DNA of 44,539 nucleotides from Selaginella moellendorffii (Eukaryota > Plantae > Lycopodiophyta), in NCBI RefSeq assembly GCF_000143415.4, contig NW_003314279.1, positions 2,073,232-2,117,770 on the forward strand, read 5' to 3'. A program made the position numbers and the translations under genes. Positions 1,921 through 40,961 of this stretch are shown in pieces. A model generated the notes under the pieces. That model made no database searches. It was not told the DNA's origin and was given only the letters and a program-made list of their open reading frames with translations. Within the stretch, counting starts at the first letter, position 1; every line of letters begins with the position of its first letter.

Positions 1921-3950
1921 ATAATCTATGGAGGATGAAGCTAGGGTTGTGTTGTTTGCAAGTGGTTGTCGTTGGATTCATTGTGGTCACTAGAGCCAAA
2001 GTTCTAGCTGGAGTTCTAACACTTCACAATGTTGTGTATTAACTTTGCATTCCTCGCACCACCAATGATGCCACCAAGTTTCAGTCTGCATCTTAAGCAA
2101 TTGTAGCTCTTTCATAAGCTTCTCTTGATATTAAGTCTACTGCTGCACTAGTGTTCAATGCTCCTTAAGCTCACTGAGTGCCAACTCAATGATATGTGCT
2201 AGCTTAGCAACAACACACATCTGGGTTTGGAAGCTTGGCTAAGAGTGGATGTCATGGTGCATGGCAACTTTAAAGAGCATGTCTTTCCCCACCTCTAATG
2301 CATAACTAAATGCTAGTTTGCAAGTTTCATGTTGGCATTTGAGGACTTTGCATTGCACTTCGAGCTTGAGTCCTTGGATGAATACTGACACCATGGGTTT
2401 CTCATTTATTATGAGCGTCTATAGCAAACATGCACACCAATGCATTTTAAATTGGATAGTATAGTTATTGATACTCATTTGCAGCATTTGCCAGAATTAA
2501 AATAGTTCATGTAGAGTTGTTGGTTAGTTTTCTCCATTCCAAATTACTTGAGGAACTTGTTAATCATTGTAGACAATAACCATCATTCATTTGGAAGCAA
2601 AAAAGATGCCCAATATTTTGCTCTTGCTTTCAAGGATCTCTGATCTTGTTATATCTTAAGTAAGTTTGAAATTGATTAATGTGATTATGAGCTAAAATAC
2701 TTGATCTAAAATAGAACTTTGGGAGGTCCATTGCCTTATAAAGGATATGAATAGTGGCCACAATTGATTATGCTCCTTTTTGGAATCTATTATAGACGAT
2801 GAAGATTCATTTACCAACAACGCTATCTAGTAATTAAGTTGGTATATAAGTCATAAGAAGAATTTTCCTCTAAGTTATGTGTGTGTATAAAAGAGTTTAT
2901 ATAGCAACAACTTGACCAATGGGTATGAATAGGCATCAAACTTCTAAAATGTGCCAAATGCCAAAACTAGGTATATGCTATAATGCTGGTTTAGAGCTTG
3001 GAGAGCTCAATCACAAGGTTTTATACTTGCTAGACATTCAAGGATTTTAAAATCATCTTTATAACACTTTATAACCTCTTATGCACTCACTATATACTAG
3101 ATGTTGTTCTCCATTCAAGTAAAAGTTTCTCAATCAATAGAGATGATTAAACACGAGGCATGAAATAGCTATATATACTCTAACCATAAGATGATGCAAA
3201 AGATAATTGTACACTACTCTAAAAATTATGAAACTAAACTCCAAAAACATGTATAACAATCTTGTAAAAAAAATAAACCTAAAAATCTCACTCCACTCAA
3301 AACACTCACTAAAACTAGCAAACATATATCAAGATCAAAAAATATAAAGATCTTGCAACTGCCAACTCCTAGGACTTGTCAAAAAGCTCTATCCAAGATT
3401 TATTTAGCTATGTAAGAAAGATCCATCTACATTATTTAGAATTGTGTGAGAATGCCCTAAACTTTTTTTACATTCTAAATAAAAGAACCCAAGTGAAAAG
3501 CTCTATAAATTACTTAATCTTGGACTAAAACTCATATGTAAGGATTTTAGAGAAAGCTTACAAGTAGATTTATCTATCAAGCCAAAGAAAGATTAAAATA
3601 GTTGAAGATCTATTGTGTATTAAACTCTTGAAGTGATTGTTGCACATGTCATGAATAAAACTTATTTGCATGTTGTGTTCCGAGAATAGAATTGAGAAAT
3701 TTGTAATACTAAAATAAAGTGCTTAACAAGATCTACAAACTTATGAGCTCCATTGCCTAAATCAATAAATAACCAAGGCATAAAGAGGAGAAAACAACTA
3801 TTCTTAGTTTAAAAAGGAAGAAAATTCAAGAAATCCTTAAAATTTAAGCATAGCTAGAATTTTTCCAGTTGGGCACATTTATTCTTACCCTATCACCATA
3901 ATGCAAATCTCTTGAGAATTTGTCTTAAAACCCAAAAAAACGAGCTTAAA
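1921..3950 (-). mobile_element. Decayed LTR-retrotransposon fragment (gag-like relic), inverted copy of 16560-18902
   Basis: The reverse complement aligns by eye with 16560-18902 over ~2 kb, mostly with transitions. It abuts the PPR 5' end at the same junction as in copy B. Confidence 0.65.
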
Positions 3951-7284: not shown

Positions 7285-7836
7285 CAAAAGGTTTGTGTAC
7301 CAAATTGAGGAAAATGGTATTTTCAAGGGGCTCGCTCTCCTTGTTTCATTCCCAACACTGTGCAATGACAACATCAAACCCTTAGATATATGAAACGTTT
7401 TAAGAGTGTTATGTTATATCTAAGCCATCCATCTTAAAAATCCAAGAATATCTAACCCCCGATGCCAATAGCACTTTTAAATAAAGAAGTACTAGCAAAA
7501 GTCCTAGCTACACTGGGATCATTGTGTTTATTCCTGATGTTTTAGTAATTTCAAAGAGTTGTGATTGTAATTGTAATTTTTAACATAATCATAATAATAA
7601 CATACATAGTTAAACATAATATAATATTTATAATAAAAATTCCTTCTACAATTGACTCTATCACATAATAAATATAACTCATAACATTATATCATAATTA
7701 AAACTCTAATTGTTAAGTGAAGTTTTGGATCTTTTATAAATGGAATTGCTCACTGTGGGATCAATGTAATATTGAATCAGTCAAATACTCTTTGTTTCAT
7801 AGAATGAAACATTTATAGAACAAGTCATCACATTCC

Positions 7837-8562
7837 CGACACTAGTGGAAGGATACTGTAATGCTGGACTGGTGGATGACGCCGAGAGGCTTCTGGAAGA
7901 GATGGTTGCCAGTGACTGCTCTCCGGACGTGTATACGTACACAAGCCTGGTCAACGGCTTCTGCAAAGTCAAAAGAATGGTGGAGGCGCACAGAGTTCTC
8001 AAGCGAATGGCCAAGGGGGGATGCCAGCCCAACGTGGTGACTTACACTGCTCTCATCGACGCGTTCTGCAGAGCTGGGAAGCCGATGGTGGCTTACAAGC
8101 TGCTGGAGGAGATGGTTGGCAACGGCGTCCAGCCGAACTTTATCACGTACAGGAGCTTGATCGGTGGCTTCTGTGGGACTGGGGACCTGGAAGAGGCTCA
8201 CAAGATGCTCAAGAGACTGGAGCGCAACGAGAACTGCAAGGCGGATATGTTCGCATACCGGGTGATGATGGACGGGCTGTGTAGAACCGGGAGAATGAGC
8301 GCAGCTCTGGAGCTTCTCGAGGCCATCAAGCAGAGTGGCACGCCTCCTCGCCACGATATCTATGTGGCGTTGATCAGGGGGCTGTGCCAGCGGAAAGAGC
8401 TCGGCAAAGCCATGGAAGTTTTGGAAGAGATGACACTCTCAGAGGAAAGGCAGGCCAAATGCCAAGGCTTACGAGGCAGTGATCCAGGAGCTAGCGAGAG
8501 AAGGGAGACACGAAAAGGCAAATGCACTCTCAGACGAATTACTTGGTAACAAAGGCCAGTAA
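7837..8562 (+). pseudogene. P-class PPR pseudogene, copy A (5'-truncated, frameshift near 8441)
   Basis: About 6 PPR motifs in ORF 7845-8549, which opens at a GTG. Homology to the other copies begins abruptly at ~7837. A 1-bp insertion near 8441 shifts off the conserved ...LLGNKGQ* end (TAA 8560-8562). Confidence 0.82.
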
Positions 8563-8735
8563 AACGAGATTTGTAATCACAAATCCGGAACATTGTGTGA
8601 ACACTATCTGGGATGTTTCCTAAGGTTTTTCGCAGAAATCAACAACCATTCAACTATTTAGTTTGAATTTACTTCTAGTTTTATTTATAAGGGCTCTTTT
8701 TCAGTGTTTGAAATTCACTTAGGAACTCTTCTTTC

Positions 8736-9782
8736 ATGGCTCTTCCATCCATTGCGAGCATTTTCGCAGCAGAGAAAAGCTATTCCATTCCACCAGTGTG
8801 TAAACTCCTTGCCTCTCCAGTGTTGAATCCGCTGTACGATGCAAAGGCCGACGCTCAGATCGATGCGTGGTGCGCGGAGTTTCTGAAGTTGCAACCTGGA
8901 AGCGAGAAAGCTGTGTTTGTTCAAGAAAGCAGGCTTGGATTGCTCGCGGCTTATGTTTACCCCAGCATTCCATACGAGAAGATTGTTCCGGTTGCAAAGT
9001 TCTTCGCTTGGTTCTTTCTTGCAGATGACATTCTGGATAGCCCGGAGATCTCCTCGTCAGACATAAGATATGTGGCAACCGCATACAAGATGGTTTTCAA
9101 GGGAAGATTTGACGAGGCCACGCTTCCAGTGAAAAATCCGGAGCTGCTGAGGCAAATGAAGATGTTATCTGAGGTTTTGGAAGAACTGTCCCTCCATATA
9201 GTGGATGAATCAGGCCGATTCGTGGATGCTATGACCAAGGTGCTCGACATGTTTGAGATTGAATCGAGCTGGCTTCGCAAGCAAATCATTCCCAACCTGG
9301 ATACGTACCTCTGGCTGAGAGAGATCACATCTGGTGTGGCTCCTTGCTTTGCTCTGATTGATGGTTTACTGCAACTTAGGCTGGAGGAGCGTGGCGTGCT
9401 GGATCATCCTCTCATACGCAAGGTTGAGGAGATTGGGACGCACCACATTGCGCTCCACAATGACTTGATCTCTCTCAGGAAGGAGTGGGCGAGTGGAAAC
9501 TACCTCAACGCCGTGCCCATTCTTGCCAGCAATTGTAAGTGTGGCTTGAACGAGGCAATCGGCAAGGTTGCGAGCATGGTGGAGGATTTGGAGAAGGATT
9601 TCGCCCAGACAAAGCATGAGATCATTTCAAGTGGGCTTGCCATGAAGCAAGGAGTCATGGACTATGTGAACGGCATAGAGGTGTGGATGGCCGGAAACGT
9701 AGAATGGGGATGGACGAGCGCTAGATACCATGGAATTGGGTGGATCCCTCCTGCAGAAAAATCAGGGACCTTCCAACTCTAG
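8736..9782 (+). CDS. MTPSL: Microbial terpene synthase-like protein (class I, probably a sesquiterpene synthase), copy A, 348 aa, intronless
   Basis: DDILD (aa 97-101), R195 in YLWLREITSG, NDLISLRKE NSE/DTE motif (242-250) and WxxxxxRY (324-331). Alpha-domain-only size typical of MTPSL and bacterial/fungal terpene synthases. Confidence 0.95.
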   Translation: MALPSIASIFAAEKSYSIPPVCKLLASPVLNPLYDAKADAQIDAWCAEFLKLQPGSEKAVFVQESRLGLLAAYVYPSIPYEKIVPVAKFFAWFFLADDILDSPEISSSDIRYVATAYKMVFKGRFDEATLPVKNPELLRQMKMLSEVLEELSLHIVDESGRFVDAMTKVLDMFEIESSWLRKQIIPNLDTYLWLREITSGVAPCFALIDGLLQLRLEERGVLDHPLIRKVEEIGTHHIALHNDLISLRKEWASGNYLNAVPILASNCKCGLNEAIGKVASMVEDLEKDFAQTKHEIISSGLAMKQGVMDYVNGIEVWMAGNVEWGWTSARYHGIGWIPPAEKSGTFQL

Positions 9783-9799
9783 ATTGTTGCTCAGTTCTA

Positions 9800-11070
9800 T
9801 CAAATAAGCAAATTGAAAAGCACCGTAGATGTGGTATCAACATCAAACACGCAGCTCAGATCTTCTATGGTATGGGCAAGAGGGACAAGTTCACCTGGGA
9901 TCTTTTGCTGGTTGCCTGCTGCAAAAACGGGCACTTTGATGAAGCGCACTGTGATGGGCATCTTGATTCTGCCAAGGTAGTTGTTAGCAAAATGCCTGCT
10001 TGCAACTTGGTCTCGTGGACGACGATGCTGGGGGCTTTATCTCAGCTCGCGGATGTAGAAAGCACTTTTGAAGAGATGATTACGTATGGAAGAGAATCAA
10101 AGAGGCAGCTGGCTTCCTCAAGGCGTTGGCTTTGGGTGTAGGCGACGAGCAGCGTTGTGACGGAGACAAGATCGTGATGCGGCATCTGATCCTGAAAGAA
10201 GCGCTCCGACTCTTTCAGGAGGCCGCAGTGGACGTAGCCGGAAAGGATTGCCGTGCAAGTCGAGAGATTCCTCACAAGCTGGAAGAGCTCCAGAGAAGAC
10301 TCCAGATGCCAGTGACGGGAGACACGATGTCGTCTCGTGCACTTGCGCAATTGCAGCATTGCTGTGTGTTGGAACGCCATAGCCACGGGATTAACCCAGT
10401 GCNNNNNNNNNNNNNNNNNNNNNNNNNNNNNNNNNNNNNNNNNNNNNNNNNNNNNNNNNNNNNNNNNNNNNNNNNNNNNNNNNNNNNNNNNNNNNNNNNN
10501 NNNNNNNNNNNNNNNNNNNNNNNNNNNNNNNNNNNNNNNNNNNNNNNNNNNNNNNNNNNNNNNNNNNNNNNNNNNNNNNNNNNNNNNNNNNNNNNNNNNN
10601 NNNNNNNNNNNNNNGTTCCAAACGATGCCCCTGCGCAGCGTTGAATCCTTCAGTGCAATGCTGACCGCATATGCGCAAGCCGGCAGCCCCAGCGACGTGT
10701 GTGATTCCTTCTAAGAGATGAAGCTAGTGGAGATGCCCGACGATTCCTGCTTCATGATTGCGAGCAGCCAAGTTGGCGAGCCCCCAATGTCTACTTCAAC
10801 TCCATGCGTCTGGATTACGGGGTGGCGGCGAGAAAGCAACACTACTGCTGCATCGTGGACATGCTGGGGCGAGCGGGATACCTGCATGCGGCGGAAGAGC
10901 TTGTGCAAACCATGCCTTTTCTTCCCAACTCGTGGGACTGGACGTCCATGCTAAGTTCTTCCAGAGGCGATAGAATCTGGAAAAACGGTGCTCGAGTGAC
11001 GAAACGAGCTTTGCTTTCGAGCCCCAGCGATGGAGCTGTTCTTGTGCTGCTCGCAAACTCACGCTCTTGA
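9800..11070 (+). pseudogene. PLS-class PPR pseudogene, copy A (start lost, internal inversion, assembly gap, in-frame stop)
   Basis: PLS fragments (GKRDKFTWDLLLVACCKNGHFDEA; HYCCIVDMLGRAGYLHAAEELVQTMPFLPN). Homologous to 21248-22444, with 10081-10322 inverted. Confidence 0.82.
10403..10614. other. Assembly gap (212 N)
   Basis: Run of N. Confidence 0.99.
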
Positions 11071-11100
11071 TTCTTACTACTTTTTTCGAAACTTTACCTT

Positions 11101-11129
11101 TATAAAACGGGTTATCGAATTTAGGGTTC
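11101..11129 (+). promoter_or_regulatory. Putative TATA box (TATAAAA, 11101-11107) and telo-box-like TTTAGGGTT just upstream of PPCS
   Basis: TATAAAA starts 39 nt before the ATG at 11140. Motif match only. Confidence 0.35.
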
Positions 11130-11139
11130 ATCGGTCATA

Positions 11140-12519
11140 ATGGAGGAAGAAGCTCAATCGTTCTTCGATTCGGCCCCGCCTCTCCGATGCCGCGACGATG
11201 TGGTCGCGAGCGTGAATCGCTTCTTGGATATCTGGAAGGCGGCATCGGCCATCGGCCAGGTTTTATCCTTACTACTAGCATTTCTCGTATTTTGGAGCTG
11301 AATCGCGTGATTCTAGACGACGCGCATTGCCATTGTTACATCCGGGGGCACGACCGTGCCCTTGGAGCGACGATGCGTTAGGGTCATTGACAATTTCAGC
11401 TCGGGGAGTCGAGGAGCAGCCTCCACAGAGTGCGTTATTCTTTCTACTCATTCTTCTTTTATGATTCTTTTTTTTTTGCAAGGTACTTCCTTGCAAGTGA
11501 CTATGCTGTGATTTTCCTTCATCGGAGGCAAGCAGCACTCTTTTTTTCTTTTGCAAATGGTGATGCTACTTTCGTGAAATACTTTTTAGAGGATCTATGC
11601 AGCCATTTTGCCGCTCGCTGCCGGATAATCCCATACAAGAATGTCTCGAACCTGTGGATGGATCCATCCGGGGTAAGCGAAATCTGCCTTTTATTTCTTC
11701 GAGAGTTTAACTCCCGCTTCGCAGCACGAGAAAAATGGTTTGATGCTGTGACTCGGGCAGTCACAGGACATCATTCTGTAAGCTCAGTTCTTGTTTCTCT
11801 TCTTGAGTTCTTAAGAATCAAAACAGGCGGTGCTCCAGAAGAAGCTCTTGAAGCTCGAGTTCACTACGCTCTTTGAGTACCTCCAAGTAAGAAACGTGCC
11901 GCGCAAACTCTGGTTTGTATGACGGTTTTTCGTGGCAGATTTTAGAGATTGTTGGAGCTGCCATGAAACCAGTTGGCAGGCATGCTATGTTTTACTTTGC
12001 AGCGGCTGTCTCCGACTTCTACGTCCCCTGGAACTCCATGGTAAGAACTTCTCGTCTTCTCTCGTTTTGTTTTCGGTGGAAATCTCAAAAATAATCTTCT
12101 CTATCCAGATGGAGCACAAGATCCAGTCGGATGACGGCTCGATGACAATGCAGCTCGCTCCGGTTCCAAAGATGCTTGGATTGTTACGAAAGCATTGGGC
12201 TCCGGAGGCCTTTTGCGTCTCGTTCAAGGTTTTTCATTTCCTTCTTCTCTATAGCAGCTCAATCGAGCAAAGTTTTCTCTCGTATCAGCTGGAAACGGAC
12301 GTGGACATACTCCTCAAGAAAGCACGCTCGTCGCTTTGCAAGTATGGCATGCACGCGGTGGTCGCCAACGAGCTCGAAACGAGGAAGAACAAGGTCGTGG
12401 TTGTGACGAGAAAAGTAGAGATGGTTTTGGAAAAGGGTGACTGCTCCGACATAGAGTTGCCGCTGGTGAATTGTCTGGTCGCCCAGCAGACCATGTATCT
12501 CCAGCAGCAACAAGCATGA
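11140..12519 (+). CDS. PPCS: Phosphopantothenate-cysteine ligase (CoA biosynthesis), 9 exons, 308 aa
   Basis: Manual splice: 11140-11259, 11317-11429, 11483-11527, 11590-11672, 11725-11777, 11827-11886, 11939-12040, 12109-12228, 12289-12519. This gives 927 nt of open frame. Family motifs present: [71 protein letters not shown]. Confidence 0.92.
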
Positions 12520-13495
12520 ATTTGGCAGCCGCTCGTCCCATCAAGTCCTCCACAAGCCAAGTCCACTCACTCGCGAGTTCTTCCTTGTCTCAAACACTTC
12601 CCGGCTCCCAGGTCTTCCTCTCCAATCTCCTCATATAAATGTATGGAAGATGCGGCCGACGCTCTCTTGGTTTTTGAGGGGTCTTGTTTGATCTCTTGTT
12701 CTTGGCATATGCCCAAAACGGACATCCGGACGACCTTGGCGATGCCATGGGTCAGAGACATTGTGGCCAATTGTGGCATATGCATCTTGTTAAAGAGCTT
12801 AAAATAGATGCTCAAAGAATCTTGTAGGGGGCATATTGGCGCCAAGTTCAGCGCGAGGGATGTTTGAAGTGATGCCCGAGCCAGATCTTGTGTGGAGCGT
12901 GATCTCGTGTCCTTGGCCAGAGTCTGCGGCATCTGATGAGCAGTAGCTGGGCATAGGCGGACAAGCTAATCCCCTGCTAGTGCTTCTTACAAATGCTCAG
13001 CTAATTTCTTATGCCGAGCGGGGCAATTGGATCCGCTAAGCTTTCCTTTGATGCTATGCCGGGAAGGGATCAAGTATCCTAGAATGCTAAAAATTTTGTG
13101 CCAGGCATTTGTCACTGTCGAAACTGATGCTTGATAGTGTTCCTTATCATATTGGAATGCAATGTTATCAGCAGCATCTTCAGTTTTCCGAATCAGTTTC
13201 TTTCATCAAATGCCAGACGTGTCTTGGAATGCAATGTTTTTCCTCATGCTTGTTTGGGATGTTATTTCCTTCAACACCATATTGGGCAGTATGCAGCTTG
13301 GAGGGAAACAAGGTATCGTTTTTCAAGTAACGGAAACACTAAGGATACTATCCCTGACACCCTTTGGTCAGTTGGATCCAATACTTACAGTGGCTCTTTT
13401 GGACCATCTATTGCTGGACTCACTACAACGAGGGAATGTGTTAATCTTCTTAAAGCGTTCATATGTGTGGAGCTAAAGAAGTTGTACTTGCTATG
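12516..13495 (+). pseudogene. PLS-class PPR pseudogene, deletion-collapsed paralogue of 39021-40961
   Basis: A colinear patchwork of blocks matching 39021-40850 (e.g. caaacacttcccggctcccaggtcttcctctccaatctcctcat; atgccgggaagggatcaagtatcct; tgggatgttatttccttcaacaccatattgg), separated by many deletions and frameshifts. Confidence 0.85.
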
Positions 13496-14869
13496 TAAAC
13501 AATTGTGAAGTACTAATGAGGAATAAGCCTTTGTTGTTTCAATGGTTTAGATTTTTGGTTATATATTTCTTACGGTTTGAATTACATCATAAGATCTAAA
13601 TTTTAACGAATAAAATTCACTTTTATGGCCTGCGATGGAGGAAAGAGTGCCCAGCATGGTGATCAGGATTTTTCGATTTACTAGGTTGGTAGCCAAGTGC
13701 TTCGATCAAGCTAGCTTGCCCTATCGTTCATATCTTTCTGTGGCGGAAACAAGCTATGGCACCAGTGTATATGCCGAGTCCGCTGCTCCAAGCAACCTCT
13801 AAACGTCTCAGATTCTCTGCCAAGTTTTACTCCTTCCTGGTTTTGCTGGCTGCTTATAGTGCATTTCATGCTTTGGCTGGCTGGATCTAGGACTTTATTC
13901 TTAGCAACATAGAAGTGTCCACTGCTTTGTGGTTGTAGACGTTTACAACGAGCATGCCGAAAATCTATTTGAGCTTTGCCTTATCTATAATCTGACCTGA
14001 CGCTTGTACTTAGCAGGCTTTTATTCCAGTGTCAAGCAAGCATATGGCTCTAGAGAATGAAACTCCAGCTAGAATCATCCAACTCCAGCTTCATCCACTG
14101 GATCAGCTTGCTGGTGGCAGCATTCACGTAGCCCAAGCCAAATGATCTGGATGACGTTCCACGCATGTTCTATTAATCCCATTGTTTGCTCTTAACATTC
14201 CCCAAAGACATCAGTGGATTCATTGATTACAATGATACGTTATGTGACTTTATCTTTCTTTTTTCACATTCCTGCAAAGCAGTTTCTTCAGTCCAAGGAC
14301 ACCCATCAGTGAGTGCTCAATGTGAAACTTTCTTTGCTGCCTCTGACCTTGTGCTTTCAAGGTCCAAGTAAGGAGTCTCCTAATGAACTCATTGTGTTTT
14401 TTATTGACTCTCTTGCAGGTTTGTGCCAGCTTGATCAGATGCTTGAGCACTATCAATTCAAAGTGCCTGCACCTGTAACCTGTTTTTTACCTGACGTTGC
14501 TCAAGTGTTTTCAGATTGATTAGTGTTTTATAGATGTCGTAGATACTCACATAGGCTGTCAAGTGATGTCTACTAGGTGTGGTGACAAGATTTGGTGACA
14601 CTTCCAAGAAATTTTTGAGACTTTAGTAATCTAACGTACTTAATATAAGTTATGTCCGATTAAGAAAATGATGAATCCTATCAAAACAAATGGGAAGTGT
14701 TAAATTTTATTTATAATGATAACTCTGAAATAAGAAGAACAGAAAATCAATCAAGCTGCACTAATGCGAAGCTCAATCATGTATTGTGATTTGACTAAAT
14801 TAAATATTAAATCAGATTAAAATAAGCTATATAAAAATAAAAAATGAGGTTTAGATCAACATTTGATTT

Positions 14870-15420
14870 CTATCAAACCTCAAAAATATCATTTTAAAAG
14901 TAGCAAATTCCTGATATATCACATATACTTGCTCCAATTGATTTGGGAGCAATTGAGTTTATAGTAGTTTTAAGGGAATTTAAGCAATTTATACAACTAT
15001 AACTTGGAGGAAGGGAAGAATAACAAATTACCATAAATAATTCCTTTATGCTCATGATTAGGATATATTCATGATATATTGTTATTGATCAAAAGACTAT
15101 AAACAATAGGTAAATTTCTTTCAAATAGGTGATACTATTATATCTAACTATGCCTGGCTCTGGTGCATCAAAAGGGCAAAAATTTGAATGTAATTCTTGT
15201 ATCTTTAGTATTGTTAGAGCTAAAAACTTAGAATTTTCATTTCTAACTACTGAAAATAGAAAAGATAAACTACTATGTTGAGGAATGTATTCATAAATAT
15301 GAAAGGTGAAGTTATATAGTGATAATTTTAATAGTAAATATTTAATTTTTTATCTAGCTGGTGAAGAAATTAATAAAAACTGCAGTTGGCTTGGTTAAAT
15401 AACAATAAGAATAAGACCTT
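14870..15420 (+). repeat. AT-rich segment duplicated at ~41138-41630 (distal end of the segmental duplication)
   Basis: Shared colinear blocks such as tatcaaacctcaaaaatatcat, caattgattt, gaatttaagcaattt, catgattagga and agaaattaataa. Confidence 0.7.
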
Positions 15421-16559
15421 GAAATATATATATATATATAAAATTGTTATCTATAATTTTAAGGTTTAATTGGGCTTTTTTTCAGCAGAACTGTATGAAA
15501 TAAATTATCAGAGAAATATACAAAAAAATTTAAATATAAAAGAAACAAAACTTTACCATCATTTCAGTTATTAATAAAACTATTTGTAAATCTCTATCAT
15601 TTATCATTTATATTCATTTATCTACAAAATTATTGTAATTAATAGATATAAGACACCAATCCTTAAGTCCTAAAATGGAGCCAAAAGGTGTGCTACATAG
15701 TAATGGCTGAGGCAAAAGTCTAATAAATATAAAATATTTGGAGTAAAAACTTTAACTTGAAAAGTTAAAAGTGGGAATGGAAATCTTAAAGAAGTGCTTG
15801 AGGAACAAATACTAAACAAGCAATGAATGGGTTTCTAAAAAGGATAAAAGAATGACTAATGTGTCTTGATATATAAAAGTGTCAAAATTGAAGTGCTAAA
15901 CTCTAATACTCAAAATAGAACAATGTCAAAACTATCTCACTTGACCAAAAAATATAATGTTTAAAGTGTTAGACTTATATAAGGCTAAATATATTCAAGC
16001 ATAAATATATCTAGAGGTGGGATGAAAGCCCAAAGCAATCATTTCATAGATTTTTGGGGGATTTGGGAAATTTCTATGGAATAGTAAAAGGGGATTACTC
16101 TAGGAAAACCTTGTGTGACTAAGGAACATTATACCTATATAGTGGGTGATAATATAAATATTAGAAAGTCTAAAGCTAGATTAAACATTGATGGATAAGT
16201 AGAGTGACTTGATGAAATATTTAAAAGTTAGCTCTAATTCCTTTGAAAGATTAAATTCAATACTCCTAATCTATGTATGGGTGGCACTATTTACTTAGAT
16301 ACTTTATATGGTTTATCAAAACCTCAATCTAGCCACGTAGTTGGAGGTGGGGAGAATATTCATAATATTCACACTTAATTTTAGTGTTTTGAAATGTCAT
16401 TTAAAAGTCCTTCACTGTATAAAGAAAGAGGAATATATAAGGAACCAACTCCTTGTAGGTTAAAAGATCTTTGAAACTATAATTGAAATGATAAATAGTT
16501 CATTAGATGAAATTAAGTCCAAGATTGAAATCGAATTTAAGACTGAGTCCAAGATTTGA

Positions 16560-18902
16560 GATTTAATCTCGTTTTTTTTTTATTTTAGGGTGAATTCTCA
16601 AAAGATTTGCATTATGGTGATAGAGTGTCCGCCAAGAGACACTTATTATCATGCTTCTTGTGTTGGGTCCTATTGGATGTTTATAGAAAATGTCTAGATT
16701 TTCTAGTTAGGTAGATGCATCATTGCTACTAGCATTAGTGCTTAAGAATGAGTGTGCCCAACTATAAAATTCTAGGTCCCATGTCTAAATTTTAAGAATT
16801 TTTTGAATTTTCTTCTTTTTTAAACTAAGAATAATTATTTTCTCCTCTTTGCACCTTGGTTGTTGATTGAATTAAGCAATGGAGCTAATGGGTTTGTAAA
16901 TCTTGTTGAGCACTTTATTTTAATATCACAAATTTCTTAATTCCGTTCATGCAAATAAGTTGTATTCATGATATGTGTAATAGTCATTTTAAAAGTTTGA
17001 TATATAAAAGATCTTCAACTATTTTAATCTTTCTTTGGCTTGTCAGATAAATTTATTTATAAGCTTTCTCTAGAATGTGAGTTTTAGTCCAAGATCAAGC
17101 AATTTATAGAGCTTTTTACTTGGGTTCTTTTATTTAGAGTGTAAAAAAAGTTTAGGGCATTCTCACGCAATTTTGAGTAATATAGATAGATCGTTCTTAC
17201 ATGGCTAAATAAATCTTGGATAAAGCTTTTTGGCGAGCCTTAGAACAAAATTTTAAGAGTTAACAACTGTAAGATTTTTATATTTTTTCATCCAGATATG
17301 TGTTTGCTAATTTTAGTGAGTTGTTTTAAGTATATTTGAGTGAGATTTTTAGGTTTATCTTTCATACAAGACTGTTATAAATGTTTTTAGAGTTTTGTTT
17401 CATGATTTTTAGAGTAGTATACAAAAATTTTAAGTGTCTTTTCTTTTTAGCTTTATGTTATTTATTAGGAATTCAAGGCTTCATCTCTTAAAACATTTGG
17501 TGTTTTTAAAGTTTAAAACTTTTTCCTTATATATTTATCCCTTGCATCATGTTATGGTTTATTTTAGTGCCCTAGAGTATATATAGCTATTTCATGTCTT
17601 ATTTTAATAATCTCTTTTGATGAGAAGCTTTTACTTGAATGGAAAACAACATTTAGTATATAGTGAGTGCATAAGAGGTTATAAGTGTTATAAAGAGTGA
17701 TTTTAAAATCCTTGAATGTCTAGCAAACATAAACCTTTGTGATTGAGCTCTCTAAGCTCTAGACTAGCATCAAAGCAAGTACCTAATTTCAGTATTTAGC
17801 GCATTTTAGAAGTATGATGCTTATTTATACTTGTTGGTCAAGTGTTATTGCTATATAAACTCCTCTTTACACACATATAACTTAGAGGAATTCTTAAGGC
17901 TTTTATGTCAGCTTAACTACTAAATGGTGTTCTAAGTAAGTAAGTCTTCATTGTTTATAATAGATTCCAAAGAGGAGCACAATCAAAACATTATACCAAT
18001 AGTGGAAACTATTTATATTCTTTATAGGGCAATAGACTTTTCAAAGTTCTATCTTGGATCAAGTGTTTTGACTCGTAATAACATTGATCAATTTCAAACT
18101 TACTTACGATACAACAAAATCACTAAAGATGCTTTGTCCCAAAAATTATTCTTGAGATCCTTGAAAGCAAGAGCAGCACATTGGGCATCTTTCTTGCTTC
18201 CAAATGAATGATGATCATTTTCTATAATGATTGATAAGTTTTTCAAATAATTTGGAATTGAGAAAATTGACTAACAACTCTATATGAACTGTTTTAATTT
18301 TGGCAAATGCTACAAAAGAGTATTAGTAACTACACTATCCAATTTAAGAAGCATTGGTGTGCATGCTTGCTATAGAGGCTGATAGCAAATGAGAAGTCCA
18401 TGGTGTTGGCATTCATCCAAGGACTCAAACTTGAAATACAATGTAAAGTCCTCAAGTGCCAATATGAAACTTGCAAAATAACATTTGGCCATGCATTAGG
18501 GGTGGAAAAGGACATACTCTTTGAGCTTGGCATGCATCACAACATTCACTCTCAGCCAAGCTTCCAAGCCCAAATATGTGCTATTGTCGAACTAGCATAT
18601 GTCGTTAAGGACAAAATGCCCATAGTGATTGAGTTAACACTCAATGAGCTTAAGGAGCATTGAGCACTTGTGCAGCAGTAAACCCAATAACAAAAGAAGC
18701 TTGTGGAGGAGCTACAATCTTTTTTAGGATGTAAATTGAAACTCGGCGGTATTACTGGTGGTGTGAGGAATGCAAAGTTAATACACACAACATTGTGAGG
18801 TGTTAGAACTCCATCTAGAACTTTGGCTTTAGTGACCACATTGAGTCCAACAACAACCACTTGCAAACAACAATGCCCTAGTTTCATCTTCCACAGATAG
18901 TC
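16560..18902 (+). mobile_element. Decayed LTR-retrotransposon fragment with gag-like relic
   Basis: Residual peptides IDQFQTYLRYNKITKDALSQKLFLRSLKARAAHW (17951-18211) and MVLAFIQGLKLEIQ (18400-) resemble retrotransposon gag. Possible decayed tRNA-Met PBS (tagcatcaaagc, ~17765). Three copies in the window. Confidence 0.62.
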
Positions 18903-19997
18903 ATGAGAGTGATAGTCCGGGGCATTGAGCCAAACATGGTGACTTACAACAGCTTGAGCCATGGCTTTTACATGGCCAACAGGGTAGACCCCACACTTTT
19001 GCTGATGGAAGAGATGAGAGCAACAAAGTGCCTTCCGGATATCATCACCTACAACACACTTATTGACGGACTTTGCAAGACGGGAAGGGTGCCAGAAGCG
19101 AACAGGCTGTTTGGAGACATGAAGGCCAAGTTTTGCAACCTGGATGTTATCATGTACAGCTGCTTGATCGGCGGGTTTTGTAAGCTGGAGAGGATCAACA
19201 TGGCTTGCACGTTGTTCGACGACACGCTCAAGCAGGCAATCCTCCCCGATGTCGTCACTTTCTCGACACTAGTGGAAGGATACTGTAATGCTGGACTGGT
19301 GGATGATGCCGAGAGGCTTCTGGAAGAGATGGTTGCCAGTGACTGCTCTCCGGACGTGTATACTTACACAAGCCTGGTCGACGGCTTCTGCAAAGTCGGA
19401 AGAATGGTGGAGGCGCGCAGAGTTCTCAAGCGAATGGCCAAGCGGGGATGCCAGCCCAACGTGGTGTGGTGACACCGCTCTCACCGCTCTACACCGCTCT
19501 CATTGACGCGTTCTGCAGAGCTGGGAAGCCGACGGTGGCTTACAAGCTGCTGGAGGAGATGGTTGGCAACGGCCGAACGTTATCACGTACAGGAGCTTGA
19601 TCGGTGGCTTCTGTGGGACTGGGGACCTGGAAGAGGCTCGCAAGATGCTCGAGAGACTGGAGCGCGACGAGAACTGCAAGGCGGATATGTTCGCGTACCA
19701 GGTGATGATGGACGGGCTGTGTACCACAGGGAGAATGAGCGCAGCTCTGGAGCTTCTCGAGGCTATCAAGCAGAGTGGCACGCCTCCTCGCCACGATATC
19801 TATGTGGCCTTGATCAGGGGGCTGTGCCAGGGGAAAGAGCTCGGCAAGGCCCTGGAAGTTTTGGAAGAGATGACGCTCTCGAGGAAAAGCAGGCCAAATG
19901 CCGAGGCTTAGCGGTGATCCAGGAGCTAGCGAGAGAAGGGAGACACGAAGAGGCAAACGCGCTCGCGGACGAATTACTTGGTAACAAAGGCCAGTAA
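18903..19997 (+). pseudogene. P-class PPR pseudogene, copy B (frameshifted)
   Basis: ORFs 18903-19472 and 19597-19911 contain 35-aa PPR motifs. A slippage duplication at 19460-19502 (gtggtgtggtgacaccgctctcaccgctctacaccgctctc) and further indels break the frame. Confidence 0.85.
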
Positions 19998-20112
19998 AAA
20001 GAGATTTGTAATCACATATCCTGAATATTGTGTAAATACTATAGATGTTCTCCTGGGATGTTTCCCAAGGCTTTCGCAGAAATAGAGTTTAGTTTGAATT
20101 TGCTTCTAATTT

Positions 20113-20121
20113 TATATATAA
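20113..20121 (+). promoter_or_regulatory. Putative TATA box of MTPSL copy B
   Basis: TATATATAA starts 45 nt upstream of the ATG. The equivalent TATTTATAA lies upstream of copies A and 1. Confidence 0.4.
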
Positions 20122-20157
20122 GGCCCTCTTTCAGAGTTCACTTAGGACTCTTCTTTC

Positions 20158-21204
20158 ATGGCTGTTTCATCCATTGCGAGCATTTTCGCAGCAGAGAAAA
20201 GCTATTCCATTCCACCAGTGTGTCAACTCCTTGTCTCTCCAGTGCTGAATCCTCTGTACGATGCAAAGGCCGAGTCTCAGATCGATGCGTGGTGCGCGGA
20301 GTTTCTGAAGTTGCAACCTGGAAGCGAGAAAGCTGTGTTTGTTCAAGAAAGCAGGCTTGGATTGCTCGCGGCTTATGTTTACCCGACCATTCCATACGAG
20401 AAGATTGTTCCGGTTGGAAAGTTCTTCGCTTCGTTCTTTCTTGCAGATGACATTCTGGATAGCCCGGAGATCTCCTCGTCGGACATGAGGAATGTGGCAA
20501 CTGCATACAAGATGGTTTTAAAGGGAAGATTTGACGAGGCCACGCTTCCAGTGAAAAATCCGGAGCTGCTGAGGCAAATGAAGATGTTATCTGAGGTCTT
20601 GGAAGAATTGTCCCTCCATGTAGTGGATGAATCAGGCCGATTCGTGGATGCTATGACCAGGGTGCTCGACATGTTTGAGATTGAATCGAGCTGGCTTCGC
20701 AAGCAAATCATTCCCAACCTGGATACGTACCTCTGGCTGAGAGAGATCACATCTGGTGTGGCTCCTTGCTTTGCTCTGATTGATGGTTTACTGCAACTTA
20801 GGCTGGAGGAGCGTGGCGTGCTGGATCATCCTCTCATACGCAAGGTTGAGGAGATTGGGACGCACCACATTGCGCTCCACAATGACTTGATGTCGCTCAG
20901 GAAGGAGTGGGCGACAGGAAACTACCTCAACGCCGTGCCCATTCTCGCCAGCAATCGTAAGTGTGGCTTGAACGAGGCAATCGGCAAGGTTGCGAGCATG
21001 CTGAAGGATTTGGAGAAGGATTTCGCTCGGACAAAGCATGAGATCATTTCAAGTGGGCTTGCCATGAAGCAAGGAGTCATGGACTATGTGAACGGGATAG
21101 AGGTGTGGATGGCCGGAAACGTAGAATGGGGATGGACGAGCGCTAGATACCATGGAATTGGGTGGATCCCTCCTCCAGAAAAATCAGGGACCTTCCAACT
21201 CTAG
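20158..21204 (+). CDS. MTPSL: Microbial terpene synthase-like protein, copy B, 348 aa, intronless
   Basis: DDILD, NDLMSLRKE and WGWTSARY motifs, with 327/348 aa identical to copy A. From memory it resembles SmMTPSL17 of S. moellendorffii, which needs BLAST confirmation. Confidence 0.95.
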   Translation: MAVSSIASIFAAEKSYSIPPVCQLLVSPVLNPLYDAKAESQIDAWCAEFLKLQPGSEKAVFVQESRLGLLAAYVYPTIPYEKIVPVGKFFASFFLADDILDSPEISSSDMRNVATAYKMVLKGRFDEATLPVKNPELLRQMKMLSEVLEELSLHVVDESGRFVDAMTRVLDMFEIESSWLRKQIIPNLDTYLWLREITSGVAPCFALIDGLLQLRLEERGVLDHPLIRKVEEIGTHHIALHNDLMSLRKEWATGNYLNAVPILASNRKCGLNEAIGKVASMLKDLEKDFARTKHEIISSGLAMKQGVMDYVNGIEVWMAGNVEWGWTSARYHGIGWIPPPEKSGTFQL

Positions 21205-21247
21205 ATTGTTGCTCAGTTCCATCAAATAGTAAAAAATAATTTGTCTC

Positions 21248-22444: not shown

Positions 22445-22485
22445 TTCTTACTACATTTCCGAAACTTTACCTTTATAAAATGGGC

Positions 22486-23301
22486 AAGAAGCTCAATCGT
22501 TCTTCGATTCGGCCCCGCCTCTCCGATGCCGTGACGATGTGGTCGCGAGCGTGAATCGCTTCTTGGATATCTGGAAGGCGGCATCGGCCATCGGCCAGGT
22601 TTTATCCTTAACTAGCATGTAGCTGAATCTCGTGATTCTAGACGACGCGCATTGCCATTGTTACATCTGGGGGCACGACCGTGCCCTTGGAGCGACGATG
22701 CGTTAGGGTCATTGACAATTTCAGCTTGGGGAGTCGAGGAGCAGCCCGTTATTCTTTCTATTCATTCTTCTTTTATGATTATTTTATTTTATTTTATTTT
22801 TTGCAGCAAGTTGCTGTGATTTTCCTTCATCGGAGGCAAGCAGCACTCTGTTTTTTCTTTTGCAAATGGTGATGCTACTTTCGTGAAATTCTTTTTAGAG
22901 GATCTATGCAGCCATTTTGCCGCTCGCTGCCGGATAATCCCTGGGTAAGCGAAATCTGCCTTTTATTTCTTCGAGAGTTTAACTCCCGCTTCGCAGCACG
23001 AGAAAAATGGTTTGATGCTGTGAGCCGGGCAGTCACAGGACATCATTCTGAGTTCTTGTTTCTCTTCTTGAGTTCTTAAGAATCAAAACAGGCGGTGCTC
23101 CTGAAGAAGCTCTTGAAGCTCGAGTTCATTATGCTCTTCGAGTACCTCCAAGTAAGAAACGTGCCGTGCAAACGCTGGTTTCTATGATGGTTTTGAATGG
23201 CAGATTTAGAGATTGTTGGAGCTGCCATGAAACCAGTTGGCAGGCATGCTATGTTTTACTTTGCAGCGGCTGTCTCCGGCTTCTACGTCCCCTGGAACTC
23301 C
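22486..23301 (+). pseudogene. PPCS: PPCS pseudogene, copy B (exons 1-7)
   Basis: Colinear with 11148-12037. The original ATG region is deleted, the exon 2 donor is deleted (gcagcc^cgttattc), exons 3 and 4 have deletions, and AAVSDFY has become AAVSGFY. It ends in an assembly gap. Confidence 0.88.
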
Positions 23302-23589
23302 NNNNNNNNNNNNNNNNNNNNNNNNNNNNNNNNNNNNNNNNNNNNNNNNNNNNNNNNNNNNNNNNNNNNNNNNNNNNNNNNNNNNNNNNNNNNNNNNNNN
23401 NNNNNNNNNNNNNNNNNNNNNNNNNNNNNNNNNNNNNNNNNNNNNNNNNNNNNNNNNNNNNNNNNNNNNNNNNNNNNNNNNNNNNNNNNNNNNNNNNNNN
23501 NNNNNNNNNNNNNNNNNNNNNNNNNNNNNNNNNNNNNNNNNNNNNNNNNNNNNNNNNNNNNNNNNNNNNNNNNNNNNNNNNNNNNNNNN
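23302..23589. other. Assembly gap (288 N)
   Basis: Run of N. Confidence 0.99.
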
Positions 23590-37570: not shown

Positions 37571-38196
37571 AGGATACCTATAAGTTGTGTTATGTAATTG
37601 CACATACAATTAAGTAGTATTTTCCTTTTGAGCCTAATGTTTGTACATTTAGAGATTTTGCTAGATCATAAGATGGGCTATAAAGTACCTAAAAGAACTA
37701 ATTTAACAAGCTATAAGTGTGGCAGTTACTTCTCATGTATGTAGTGTAATTGAAAATTATTTATTTTGATCATAAAATGTTATAAGTTTGACAACAAATG
37801 CTACTCTTCAGATTGTTACCTTGATAATAAAGAAGATCCCAAAGAGGTAAAAATGTTTTAAGATGTATATGTCATTGATTCATTATATTAAGGATTCTAT
37901 GCCAAAATTATTAGCTAATAACAATCCAATATAATTGTATAATTTTAAAATATAAGATTACTATTAGATTAAAATTTAGACTATAATGTGCAAGTATATT
38001 TAAGAATACTCTAAGTTTTGATTAATAAAATTAATTACAGAATCTAAATATTTTTTCTATCAAATTTTATAAAAAAAATTTGAAATAATAATTAGATTTT
38101 AAGAATTTGACTCTATATGGTAGTAGATTTACTTTGTTTTAATATAGCACTAATAAAAGCTGAAATTTCCCTCTATGTACCTTCACGACTATATAG

Positions 38197-38964: not shown

Positions 38965-39024
38965 CCGCTGGTGAATTGTCCGGTCAGCCAGCAGACCATG
39001 TATCTCCAGCAGCAACAAGCATGA
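38965..39024 (+). pseudogene. PPCS: Detached 3' tail of PPCS copy B (last ~19 codons)
   Basis: ccgctggtgaattgtccggtcagccagcagaccatgtatctccagcagcaacaagcatga matches 12460-12519. Confidence 0.85.
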
Positions 39025-40961
39025 ATCCGGCAGCTGCACGAGAGCTTTGCCTCGATCTAGAGAAGTGCGTTCTTCTCATCAAATCCTCCACAACAATCGC
39101 CCAGGCCAAGTCCACTCACTTGCGAGTTCTTCCTTGTCTCAAACACTTTCCCGGCTCCCAGGTCTTCCTCTCCAATCTCCTCATACAAATGTACGGAAGA
39201 TGTGGCAGCATCTCCGATGCTTGCTTGGTCTTTGAGGGAATCCAAGATAAGAATTCCTTCTCGTGGGATCTTTTACTCTCGGCATATGCCCAAAACGGGC
39301 ATATTCAAAAGGCAAAGTACGTTTTTGATGAGATGCCACAAAGGTCCCCGGCATCATGGACGGCCATGTTGGTGTCATACGCACGGAGTGGCCACCTTGG
39401 TGATGCCGAGGATATGTACAAATACATGCCCTTTAAAGACATTGTGGCCAAAACCTCTATTCTTGTGGCATATGCCCAATTGGGGCATCTTGCTAAAGCG
39501 CTTAAAATCTTTAGCGAGATGCCTCGCGCTGATCAAATTTGCTGGAATGCAATGCTTTCGGCCCACACCCTAAACGGGAATCTCATGGACGCTAGAAGAT
39601 TTTTTAAGTCAATGCCTGCAAGGAATCTATCATCGTGGACGACTATGCTCTTGGCATATTCTCAAGCTGGGCATCTGGTTGGCGCCAGTTACATATTTGA
39701 TTCTATGCCCTACAGGGACATGGTGTGCTGGAACGCGATGTTCACGGCATTCTCCATCCACGGATGTCTGGAAGAGGCGCGAGGAATGTTTGAAGTGATG
39801 CCTGAGCGAGATCTTGTGTCGTTCAATGGGATGCTGTGTGGATTCGTCTACAATTTTGCCAGGGATTTGGAGCACGAGATGGTGGAGGAATCGAGAAAAC
39901 TTTTTGATTCAATGCCGGAGCGTGATCTCGTGTCTTGGACGAACATGATCTGCCTGTATGGCCAGAGTGGAGATCTGGAAAAGGCGCAAGAAGTATTTAA
40001 TTCCATGCCGGATTTTGACGTCGTTTCAAGGACAGCGCTTCTTGTCGCCTTTACCCAAAATGGCGATCTCGCTGCTGCTAGAAACGCATTCGACCAGATG
40101 CCGCAGCGGGATATCATCGCCTGGAATGCTATGCTTCTTGCAAATGCTCAGCATGGAAAGTTTGTGGAGGCTAGAGCCTTTTTCGCCGCCATGCCAGTGA
40201 GAGATCTTGTTTCGTGGAACACAATGCTCATTGCCTATGCCGAGCGCGGCGATTTGGAATCCGCTAAACTTTGCTTTGATTCTATGCCGGGAAGGGATCA
40301 AGTATCCTGGAATGCTCTAATTTCCGCGTATGCCGAAGCCGGCCATTTGTCACTGTCGACATTGATGTTTGATAGTGCGCCTTATCACGATCTAATCTCT
40401 TGGAATGCAAGGTTAACAGCATTCACGCACCATCTACAGTTTACGGAATCAGTTAAGATCTTTCACCAAATGCCAGACCGAAACATGGTGTCCTGGAATG
40501 CAATGCTCTTGGCATTTGCCAGAACTGGGCATGCGGTAAAGGCCTTAGCGTTTTTCCATGCCATGCCTGCTTGGGATGTTATTTCCTTCAACACCATATT
40601 GGACATGAATTGGAGTATGCAGCTCTTGGCTGCGATGCTTTTGGAGGGATTCTTTGCTGATGATGTGACGTTCACATCAGTTTTGTTGGGTTGTAGTCAT
40701 CAAGGTGGAATAGTAAATGCAGGGTCAGTCTTTTTGTCTATGATAGTTGACCATGGACTTACTGTAAGGAGGGAACAATATGGATGTGTGGTTGATCTTC
40801 TTTGCAGAAGTGTTCATTTGTGTGGAGCTAAAGAAGTTCTACTTGCCATGCCATTTACACTAGACAGCTGTGATCGGGTCTGTATGCTGGAAGCATCAAA
40901 CAATAAGATTTATTCTCCTTATTTCTCATTAAAAAGAAAAATCAGAAACAAGTACAATTAA
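39021..40961 (+). CDS. PLS-class PPR protein with ~15 tandem 31-aa S/SS-type motifs, a partial E domain and no DYW; 646 aa, intronless
   Basis: An uninterrupted ORF whose first ATG is at 39021 (the ORF track opens at a TTG at 38976). Repeats MPxRDxVSWNAMLxAYAQxG and ends with TFTSVLLGCSHQG...YGCVVDLLCRS...MPF. Confidence 0.9.
   Translation: MNPAAARELCLDLEKCVLLIKSSTTIAQAKSTHLRVLPCLKHFPGSQVFLSNLLIQMYGRCGSISDACLVFEGIQDKNSFSWDLLLSAYAQNGHIQKAKYVFDEMPQRSPASWTAMLVSYARSGHLGDAEDMYKYMPFKDIVAKTSILVAYAQLGHLAKALKIFSEMPRADQICWNAMLSAHTLNGNLMDARRFFKSMPARNLSSWTTMLLAYSQAGHLVGASYIFDSMPYRDMVCWNAMFTAFSIHGCLEEARGMFEVMPERDLVSFNGMLCGFVYNFARDLEHEMVEESRKLFDSMPERDLVSWTNMICLYGQSGDLEKAQEVFNSMPDFDVVSRTALLVAFTQNGDLAAARNAFDQMPQRDIIAWNAMLLANAQHGKFVEARAFFAAMPVRDLVSWNTMLIAYAERGDLESAKLCFDSMPGRDQVSWNALISAYAEAGHLSLSTLMFDSAPYHDLISWNARLTAFTHHLQFTESVKIFHQMPDRNMVSWNAMLLAFARTGHAVKALAFFHAMPAWDVISFNTILDMNWSMQLLAAMLLEGFFADDVTFTSVLLGCSHQGGIVNAGSVFLSMIVDHGLTVRREQYGCVVDLLCRSVHLCGAKEVLLAMPFTLDSCDRVCMLEASNNKIYSPYFSLKRKIRNKYN

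What the first reader, a model, noticed from the sequence alone, without database searches (positions are those of the whole stretch)
12460..12560. Bacterial-style ATGA stop/start overlap between PPCS and a PLS-PPR gene in a plant nuclear genome
Seen: the PPCS stop (TGA 12517-12519) overlaps the start (ATG 12516-12518) of the downstream PPR. The same caagcATGAat junction survives in copy B (39021-39024), where that ATG is the first Met of an intact 646-aa PPR. There is no intergenic space for a PPCS 3' UTR or a PPR promoter. Known: 4-nt ATGA overlaps mark translational coupling in prokaryotic operons and termination-reinitiation in some viruses, and are very unusual for plant nuclear genes. 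Inference: either a bicistronic PPCS-PPR mRNA, or a PPR promoter embedded in PPCS exons.
Basis: partly seen in the sequence, partly recalled or inferred. Interest (0 to 1): 0.85.

Follow-up and report, generated by a model that had tools for sequence, protein, structure and literature searches.

The report
PPCS stop overlapping a PPR start
The four-letter ATGA overlap between a coenzyme-A gene (PPCS) and a PPR gene in this Selaginella locus is real, but in every copy one partner is dead, so it is most likely a relic of a duplicated gene cassette and not a working two-protein mRNA.

Summary
PPCS (9 exons, 11140-12519, introns confirmed by spliced RNA contigs) ends with a TGA that overlaps an ATG exactly where PPR homology begins. 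The same junction stands at 39021-39024.

No copy has both genes intact:
- Copy A has an intact PPCS, but its PPR stops after 40 codons and carries large deletions. RNA contigs run from the PPCS exons through the stop into this remnant, so the remnant serves as PPCS 3'UTR.
- Copy B has a 646-codon PPR ORF but only about 55 nt of PPCS tail. The upstream PPCS-2 breaks off in exon 8.
- The other haplotype's copy B has a 2-nt frameshift. Between the two alleles dN/dS is about 0.6, from 19 changes.
- A third cassette, 240 kb away, has a frameshifted PPCS end and the same dead PPR.

All junctions descend from one MTPSL-PPR-PPCS-PPR cassette, so their conservation is shared ancestry. The likeliest history is an ancestral abutting pair, duplication, then reciprocal decay. 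A working bicistron today is very unlikely. An ancestral shared transcription unit remains possible and untested.

Two unchecked notes of this scan report other ATGA overlaps involving PPR genes elsewhere in this genome.

The parts
11140..12519 (+). PPCS-A, phosphopantothenoylcysteine synthetase. It has 9 exons: 11140-11259, 11317-11429, 11483-11527, 11590-11672, 11725-11777, 11827-11886, 11939-12040, 12109-12228, 12289-12519. The product is 308 aa and intact.
   Evidence: Spliced RNA contigs give all 8 introns. The joined ORF is 927 nt. Pfam DFP match. PDB PPCS matches. Alignment with plant PPCS.
12516..12519 (+). ATGA junction A: the PPCS stop TGA overlaps the ATG of the PPR remnant.
12516..13495 (+). 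PPR2-A, a decayed PLS-type PPR pseudogene. It has a 40-codon ORF (12516-12638), then stops, small indels and two large internal deletions relative to copy B.
12520..13571 (+). Transcribed stretch downstream of the PPCS stop, read as the PPCS 3'UTR. It is contiguous with spliced PPCS exons to 12727 in one contig. Further contigs reach 13283-13571 in two of four runs.
   Evidence: tables 2 and 8.
22479..23301 (+). PPCS-2, a truncated second copy (exons 1-7 in the window, then an assembly gap at 23302-23589). In the gap-free allele it breaks off at the start of exon 8 and runs into AT-rich repeat DNA.
38965..39024 (+). Relic of the PPCS last exon in copy B (about 55 nt plus stop, 3 mismatches to copy A). 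With the ATG at 38956 it forms a 22-codon upstream ORF that ends at the TGA overlapping the PPR ATG.
39021..39024 (+). ATGA junction B.
39021..40961 (+). PPR2-B, a 646-codon PLS-type PPR ORF. It has no E or DYW domain and ends in AT-rich sequence. It is transcribed. It is frameshifted in the other haplotype.
   Evidence: loose ends match B at 40606.
14797..15458 (+). Downstream flank of copy A that is homologous to 40932-41685 after copy B. It shows the duplication was of DNA beyond the transcribed part.

Best explanation
The window is Selaginella moellendorffii. It carries repeated copies of a compact, co-directional cassette: microbial-type terpene synthase (MTPSL), then PPR1, then PPCS, then PPR2. 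In the ancestor of these copies, PPR2 began at an ATG formed with the PPCS stop (..GCA TGA / ATG AAT..).

After duplication the two neighbours decayed reciprocally. Cassette A, and the related cassette C elsewhere on the scaffold, kept PPCS and lost PPR2. The PPR2 remnant there is now simply the 3'UTR of the PPCS mRNA. In the second cassette, PPCS was broken in exon 8 and separated from its last 55 nt by about 15.6 kb of repeat-rich DNA. PPR2-B kept a long ORF and is transcribed from sequence upstream of the relic.

The ATGA overlap today couples nothing. It is an inherited junction.

Shown: the junctions, the gene structures, the decay states, transcription across junction A, and transcription of B. 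Inferred: the intact ancestral pair, the order of events, and that B is the continuation of cassette 2.
For: Species and allele. The window is 97% identical to GL377583.1.

Cassette copies.
- Self-comparison shows the MTPSL-PPR1-PPCS unit at 7824-12037 repeated at 19251-23301, and PPR2 pieces with downstream flank at 12460-15458 matching 38965-41685.
- A third cassette, L002, has the same gene order, the same junction and the same dead PPR2.

Gene states.
- PPCS-A is intact and spliced in RNA.
- PPR2-A stops after 40 codons and has large deletions.
- PPCS-2 is truncated in exon 8 in the gap-free allele.
- PPR2-B has a 646-codon ORF with 7 PPR stretches and a full-length N-terminus relative to its family.
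- The other allele of PPR2-B is frameshifted, with dN/dS 0.6 from 13 non-synonymous and 6 synonymous changes.

Transcription.
- RNA contigs bridge junction A with more than 200 nt on each side, and depth is similar on both sides.
- The same RNA runs, from several studies, hold 0.45-0.69 of the sampled words of the B stretch.

Genome context. CDS-to-CDS spacings of 59-240 bp at other PPR loci show that this genome is generally very compact.
Against: PPR2-B stayed open over 1.9 kb while PPR2-A collected many indels. PPR2 was therefore under selection for some time, possibly while still abutting an intact PPCS. The ancestral overlap may then have been a working arrangement and not an accident.

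NCBI's model P0002 joins PPCS-2 exons to PPR2-B. If RNA supports it, PPR2-B still depends on the PPCS-2 promoter.

I could not map 5' ends of B transcripts. Assembled contigs cannot prove that a single molecule spans junction A.

Whether B continues cassette 2 or is a separate partial duplicate is not settled.
Confidence: 0.75

Rival explanations
1. Working bicistronic PPCS-PPR mRNA today. Ribosomes terminate at the PPCS UGA and reinitiate at the overlapping AUG, as in prokaryotic coupling or viral termination-reinitiation.
For: Contigs bridge junction A. The ATGA is kept in all copies and alleles.
Against: No copy has both ORFs. The PPR after the intact PPCS is a 40-codon stump, and the open PPR has no PPCS. 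No UGGGA-type TURBS core is seen in the 100 nt before the junction (read). The first ORF is 308 codons long. The conservation of the junction is by descent.
Confidence: 0.03
2. Shared transcription unit, ancestrally and perhaps still. PPR2 was expressed from the PPCS promoter or from a start site inside the PPCS 3' exons. PPR2-B is still driven by the PPCS-2 promoter through a spliced chimeric transcript whose PPCS pseudo-exons serve as leader.
For: NCBI model P0002 links PPR1-2 and PPCS-2 exons, using the natural exon-7 donor, to an exon at 38794-38880 and on to PPR2-B. A B-like RNA contig extends at least 255 nt upstream of the junction. PPCS-A transcripts show no clear end between the stop and the PPR remnant. 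PPCS itself starts within about 70 bp of the PPR1 stop, so promoters inside neighbouring genes do occur here.
Against: P0002 is a computed model that reads PPCS exons partly out of frame and may be ab initio. The X1 contig is unspliced across the model's last intron. There are no 5'-end data.
Confidence: 0.15
3. In copy B the PPCS relic has been co-opted as a regulatory upstream ORF. It is 22 codons (38956-39024), and its stop overlaps the PPR AUG, giving reinitiation-dependent translation of the PPR.
For: The uORF exists in both haplotypes. Reinitiation after short uORFs is well established in eukaryotes (general knowledge).
Against: A transcribed variant has a 10-nt deletion that shifts this uORF out of frame (loose end at 12483). 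Other upstream AUGs lie in the leader. The PPR itself is frameshifted in one haplotype. The uORF's ATG is new sequence at the breakpoint, and there is no sign of selection on it.
Confidence: 0.06
4. Assembly or annotation artefact: the junction does not exist in the plant.
For: The window has two N gaps, and the public models in this region are chimeric.
Against: The junction is present in a second haplotype, in a third cassette and in RNA contigs from four studies. The gaps lie elsewhere.
Confidence: 0.01

Closest known systems
Tandem or segmental gene duplicates with reciprocal loss, and a pseudogene remnant used as the 3'UTR of the neighbouring gene
   Same: The duplicated cassette keeps one member of the pair in each copy. 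The dead PPR is transcribed as the tail of the PPCS mRNA.
   Different: The two genes abut with a 4-nt stop/start overlap, which is rare for plant nuclear genes. The cassette also carries a microbial-type terpene synthase and a second PPR at spacings of 35-70 bp.
Prokaryotic translational coupling at ATGA overlaps
   Same: The same four letters, with the stop of gene 1 inside the start of gene 2, in the same orientation.
   Different: This is a nuclear, intron-containing first gene. No copy has both ORFs intact. There is no evidence of coupled translation.
Viral termination-reinitiation (calicivirus TURBS, influenza B M2/BM2 UAAUG) and green-algal polycistronic nuclear genes (PMC7896298, PMC11291117)
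   Same: Overlapping or closely spaced ORFs on one capped mRNA in a eukaryote.
   Different: No TURBS-like motif was seen. According to the abstract of PMC11291117, algal polycistrons are translated by leaky scanning. From my own knowledge this needs a first ORF with few AUGs, whereas PPCS has 308 codons and many internal AUGs. The second ORF here is dead where the first is alive.
PLS-class PPR genes of S. moellendorffii (a large intronless family)
   Same: PPR2-B has PPR/PPR_2 repeats and the family's usual short N-terminus.
   Different: It has no E or DYW domain. The nearest family members outside the cassette are only about 37% identical. One allele is frameshifted.

Membership tests
Phosphopantothenoylcysteine synthetase (PPCS, Pfam DFP PF04127) | Sequence similarity to PPCS along its whole length, with the native C-terminus | tested here: met
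   The 308-aa spliced product aligns end to end with plant PPCS. There are also PDB 1p9o and 7edz matches and a DFP match. NCBI names the alleles phosphopantothenate-cysteine ligase.
PLS-class PPR protein | Tandem PPR motifs | tested here: met
   PF01535 at E 6.6e-83 with 7 stretches, and PF13041 at E 7.6e-64.
PLS-class PPR protein | C-terminal E and DYW editing domains, as in most Selaginella PLS members | tested here: not met
   There is no PF20431 or PF14432 match. The ORF leaves the family pattern after the ..LLAMPF motif and ends in AT-rich sequence.
Bicistronic mRNA with translational coupling or termination-reinitiation | Both ORFs intact at one locus | tested here: not met
   In A and C the PPR is dead. 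In B the PPCS is absent.
Bicistronic mRNA with translational coupling or termination-reinitiation | One RNA molecule spans both ORFs | tested here: inconclusive
   Assembled contigs bridge junction A, but contigs cannot prove single molecules. No long reads were available.
Bicistronic mRNA with translational coupling or termination-reinitiation | The second ORF is translated from the overlapping AUG | not testable with these tools
   This needs Ribo-seq, a reporter assay or proteomics.
Calicivirus-type TURBS reinitiation | A UGGGA core complementary to 18S rRNA within about 100 nt upstream of the junction | tested here: not met
   No TGGGA occurs in 12417-12515 or 38920-39020 when reading. This is a simple string check only.
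Transcribed pseudogene remnant in a 3'UTR | Disrupted ORF homologous to a coding gene | tested here: met
Transcribed pseudogene remnant in a 3'UTR | Covered by RNA contiguous with the upstream gene's last exon | tested here: met
   record 21 of X4 covers 11786-12727 spliced, and the depth tables reach 13571.

The most novel reading that the evidence does not exclude
PPR2 was, and in copy B perhaps still is, expressed as the downstream part of the PPCS transcription unit. Together with two other unchecked ATGA overlaps involving PPR genes noted in this genome (tRNase Z stop on a PPR start; a PPR coupled to a PP2C gene), this could mean that Selaginella PPR genes recurrently ride on neighbouring genes' transcripts. 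That would be a nuclear operon-like way of expressing part of its very large PPR family.
Probability: 0.1. Interest if true: 0.75.

Novelty: new member of a known kind. Interest (0 to 1): 0.3.

Why it matters
As it stands the finding is mostly a cautionary case. A bacterial-looking stop/start overlap in a plant nuclear genome turns out to be a junction inherited through cassette duplication, with one partner dead in every copy.

It still documents three things:
- How tightly genes are packed in S. moellendorffii.
- How a PPR pseudogene can become the 3'UTR of an essential coenzyme-A gene.
- How two abutting genes can be split between duplicates by reciprocal decay.

If the ancestral pair shared a transcript, and if the other ATGA overlaps involving PPR genes in this genome are real, it would bear on how a family of many hundreds of PPR genes is expressed and spread.

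Tried and rejected
- Laying reads on copy B was not possible.
- Exact-sequence look-ups found nothing for the 646-aa PPR2-B, the 325-aa frameshifted allele, PPCS P0123, P0049 or P0126.
- A search with the first 208 codons around junction B, meant to catch RNA-contig ORFs, found nothing.
- PPCS relatives from public assemblies were about 55% identical and of unknown species. The one transcript contig fetched (L006) has a 310-nt 3'UTR with no PPR. This says nothing about other Selaginella species.
- The bacterial promoter/terminator scan upstream of B is irrelevant for a plant nuclear gene and was disregarded.
- Literature searches found no report of a PPCS-PPR or other PPR bicistron in Selaginella. 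One search failed on syntax.
- The idea that PPR1 and PPR2 are halves of one PPR split by a PPCS insertion was rejected. PPR1 ends with an E-like part and PPR2 starts with a complete N-terminus.
- The idea that the assembly gap at 23302-23589 hides the rest of PPCS-2 was rejected, because the gap-free allele shows the break.

Full report
**What is in the sequence**

The junction string caagcATGAat is present at 12511-12521 and at 39016-39026.

The window is Selaginella moellendorffii:
- It is about 97% identical to GL377583.1 positions 2294360-2325508 (locus L001) of assembly GCA_000143415.2. It therefore looks like the other haplotype or another assembly of the same region.
- The nearest proteins are all named from that species.

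**The PPCS gene**

Contigs from four public runs, each from a different study, are spliced, so they come from RNA. They show eight introns between 11260 and 12288.
- After allowing for equivalent cut positions, seven introns are GT-AG and one is GC-AG.
- Joining the nine exons from ATG 11140 gives a 927-nt ORF of 308 aa ending at TGA 12517-12519.
- The product aligns along its whole length with PPCS of Physcomitrium, Ceratodon, a liverwort, Diphasiastrum and seed plants.
- The last residues (..[21 protein letters not shown]) align with their C-termini, and the proteins end within a few residues of each other. The stop is therefore the native PPCS stop.
- The last exon also matches human and yeast PPCS structures.

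**The PPR after it (copy A)**

tblastn with the copy-B protein places residue 1 exactly on 12516. From that ATG the frame is open for only 40 codons, with TAA at 12636-12638. More stops follow.

Relative to copy B the remnant has several small indels in the first 300 nt. Its homology to copy B is also broken into pieces: A 12725 jumps to 12851 where B goes 39302 to 39777, and A 12893 jumps to 13000 where B goes 39819 to 40226.

The GL377583.1 allele carries the same lesions. This is a pseudogene.

**Copy B**

The ORF from ATG 39021 runs 646 codons. It has strong PPR matches but no E or DYW domain.

Its N-terminus is as long as those of other annotated S. moellendorffii PPR proteins, which start 5-20 residues before the same first motif. 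The ATG is therefore a plausible native start.

Upstream, homology to PPCS begins only at about 38965, some 55 nt before the stop, with 3 mismatches to copy A. Before that lies AT-rich DNA without PPCS similarity.

The GL377583.1 allele differs by 20 substitutions and a 2-nt deletion at nt 906-907 that splits the ORF. There are 13 non-synonymous and 6 synonymous changes, giving dN/dS of about 0.6. With so few changes this cannot be told apart from neutrality.

**The larger picture: a repeated cassette**

Self-comparison and protein matches show the order microbial-type terpene synthase (MTPSL, 348 aa), PPR1, PPCS, PPR2.
- The order occurs at 7824-15458 (cassette A).
- MTPSL, PPR1 and PPCS exons 1-7 occur again at 19251-23301 (cassette 2).
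- A further inverted MTPSL lies at 1-1889.

The window has an assembly gap at 23302-23589. The gap-free allele shows that PPCS-2 really breaks off at the start of exon 8 and runs into AT-rich repeat DNA.

Copy B lies 15.6 kb further on, on the same strand. The DNA between them includes:
- a repeat also found at 17075-18319;
- an LTR retrotransposon (26846-33421) that is missing from the other haplotype.

The simplest reading is that copy B (PPCS tail plus PPR2-B) is the continuation of cassette 2, whose PPCS was torn apart by insertions and a deletion of about 330 nt. A separate partial duplication is not excluded.

Homology between A and B continues past the PPR (14797-15458 against 40932-41685). 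The duplication was therefore of DNA, not of an mRNA.

A third cassette lies 240 kb away on the same scaffold (L002) and is 94% identical to A. It has the same order, the same junction string and the same dead PPR2. It also lacks a few bases (7-8) just before the PPCS stop. NCBI's model P0121 therefore reads from PPCS into the PPR frame and ends at the dead PPR's TAA.

**Consequences for the observation**

The junction is kept in A, B, C and their alleles because all descend from one junction. It is no better conserved than neighbouring sequence, which is about 94-95% identical. Nowhere are both genes intact.

**Transcription**

In copy A, one 794-nt contig (X4) covers exons 6-9 spliced and continues unbroken to 12727, 208 nt past the stop.
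- Its mismatching tail fits the other allele's sequence at that point.
- Contigs of X1 and X4 go on to 13283-13571.
- X2 and X3 mostly stop near 12727.
- There is no depth step at the junction.

The PPR remnant therefore behaves as the PPCS 3'UTR.

Little RNA covers 10650-11147. PPCS therefore starts close to its ATG, inside or just after the PPR1 remnant.

Copy B is also transcribed:
- The same RNA runs hold 0.45-0.69 of its sampled words.
- A loose end in X4 matches 40606 in the other allele's form.
- An X1 contig runs from B-type sequence at least 255 nt upstream into the junction. It carries a 10-nt deletion relative to the window.

I could not map the 5' ends of B transcripts.

**How it most likely works**

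Today the overlap does nothing in particular.
- In A and C, ribosomes finish PPCS and the rest of the mRNA is UTR.
- In B, the PPCS relic with a new ATG (38956) makes a 22-codon upstream ORF ending at the overlap. It is shifted in a transcribed variant and shows no sign of being selected.

The history I infer is in three steps:
1. An intact PPCS abutted an intact PPR2.
2. The cassette was duplicated.
3. The pair decayed reciprocally.

PPR2-B stayed open while PPR2-A decayed. This suggests that PPR2 was once functional, and perhaps still is in this haplotype.

How PPR2 was expressed while it abutted PPCS is unknown. A start site within the 3' part of PPCS is the more likely option, because PPCS itself starts within 70 bp of PPR1. 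NCBI's chimeric model P0002, which joins PPCS-2 exons to PPR2-B, keeps open a shared transcription unit. Coupled translation after a 308-codon ORF is unlikely.

**Context and comparison**

At three other PPR loci sampled, CDS-to-CDS spacings are 59-946 bp and the upstream neighbours are divergent. The genome is compact, but head-to-tail abutment is not the rule.

Two unchecked notes of this scan report other ATGA overlaps involving PPR genes in this genome. I could not test them.

I found no paper describing such a pair in Selaginella. Polycistronic nuclear genes are described for green algae (PMC7896298, PMC11291117). A Populus preprint also reports transcripts spanning several loci (10.1101/2025.07.17.665350). 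I saw only the abstracts of these papers.

**Verdict**

The functional interpretation is not supported for the present loci. The ancestral version remains open. Interest is modest.

Noticed in passing
window 7824-12519, 19251-23301; L002 3208-7258: The cassette is extremely compact and co-directional. MTPSL stop 21204 to PPR1 ATG 21248 is 44 bp. PPR1 stop 22444 to the PPCS-2 ATG at about 22479 is about 35 bp. PPR1-A stop 11070 to PPCS-A ATG 11140 is 70 bp. PPR1 of cassette 2 has a single in-frame stop at 21971-21973. This is the subject of scan note s1-388280.
   Followed up: partly
window 26846-33421: LTR retrotransposon with 1.1-kb LTRs that are 98.5% identical (26846-27989 and 32283-33421). 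It is absent from the GL377583.1 allele, where L001 14682-14687 looks like the empty site. This is a young, polymorphic insertion.
   Followed up: partly
L002 6001-7258 (GL377583.1 2053124-2066381): The third cassette's PPCS lacks a few bases (7-8) just before the stop. The NCBI models (P0121, P0124) therefore read from PPCS into the PPR frame and end at the dead PPR's TAA, giving a natural PPCS-PPR-stump fusion ORF.
   Followed up: partly
L001 10001-21149; window 21371-39997: NCBI protein P0002 ('PPR At1g09410, mitochondrial') is a chimeric model. It stitches together PPR1, out-of-frame PPCS-2 exons, a small exon (window 38794-38880) and PPR2-B up to the allele's frameshift.
   Followed up: partly
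window 12530-12555: RNA contigs of two runs lack these 26 nt. The ends are non-canonical, so this is not an intron. It is presumably another allele or cassette copy and shows ongoing deletion in the PPR remnant.
   Followed up: no
window 11528-11589: PPCS intron 3 is a GC-AG intron, spliced in all four RNA runs.
   Followed up: no
window 10403-10614 and 23302-23589: There are two runs of N (assembly gaps). The first lies inside PPR1-A. The second lies right after PPCS-2 exon 7 and corresponds to about 297 bp in the gap-free allele.
   Followed up: yes
window 17075-18319, 23590-24840, 2641-3887 (inverted): A repeat about 1.2 kb long and about 81% alike between copies flanks the cassettes. It lies upstream of MTPSL copies and just after the PPCS-2 break. 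It may be a transposable element involved in the rearrangements.
   Followed up: no
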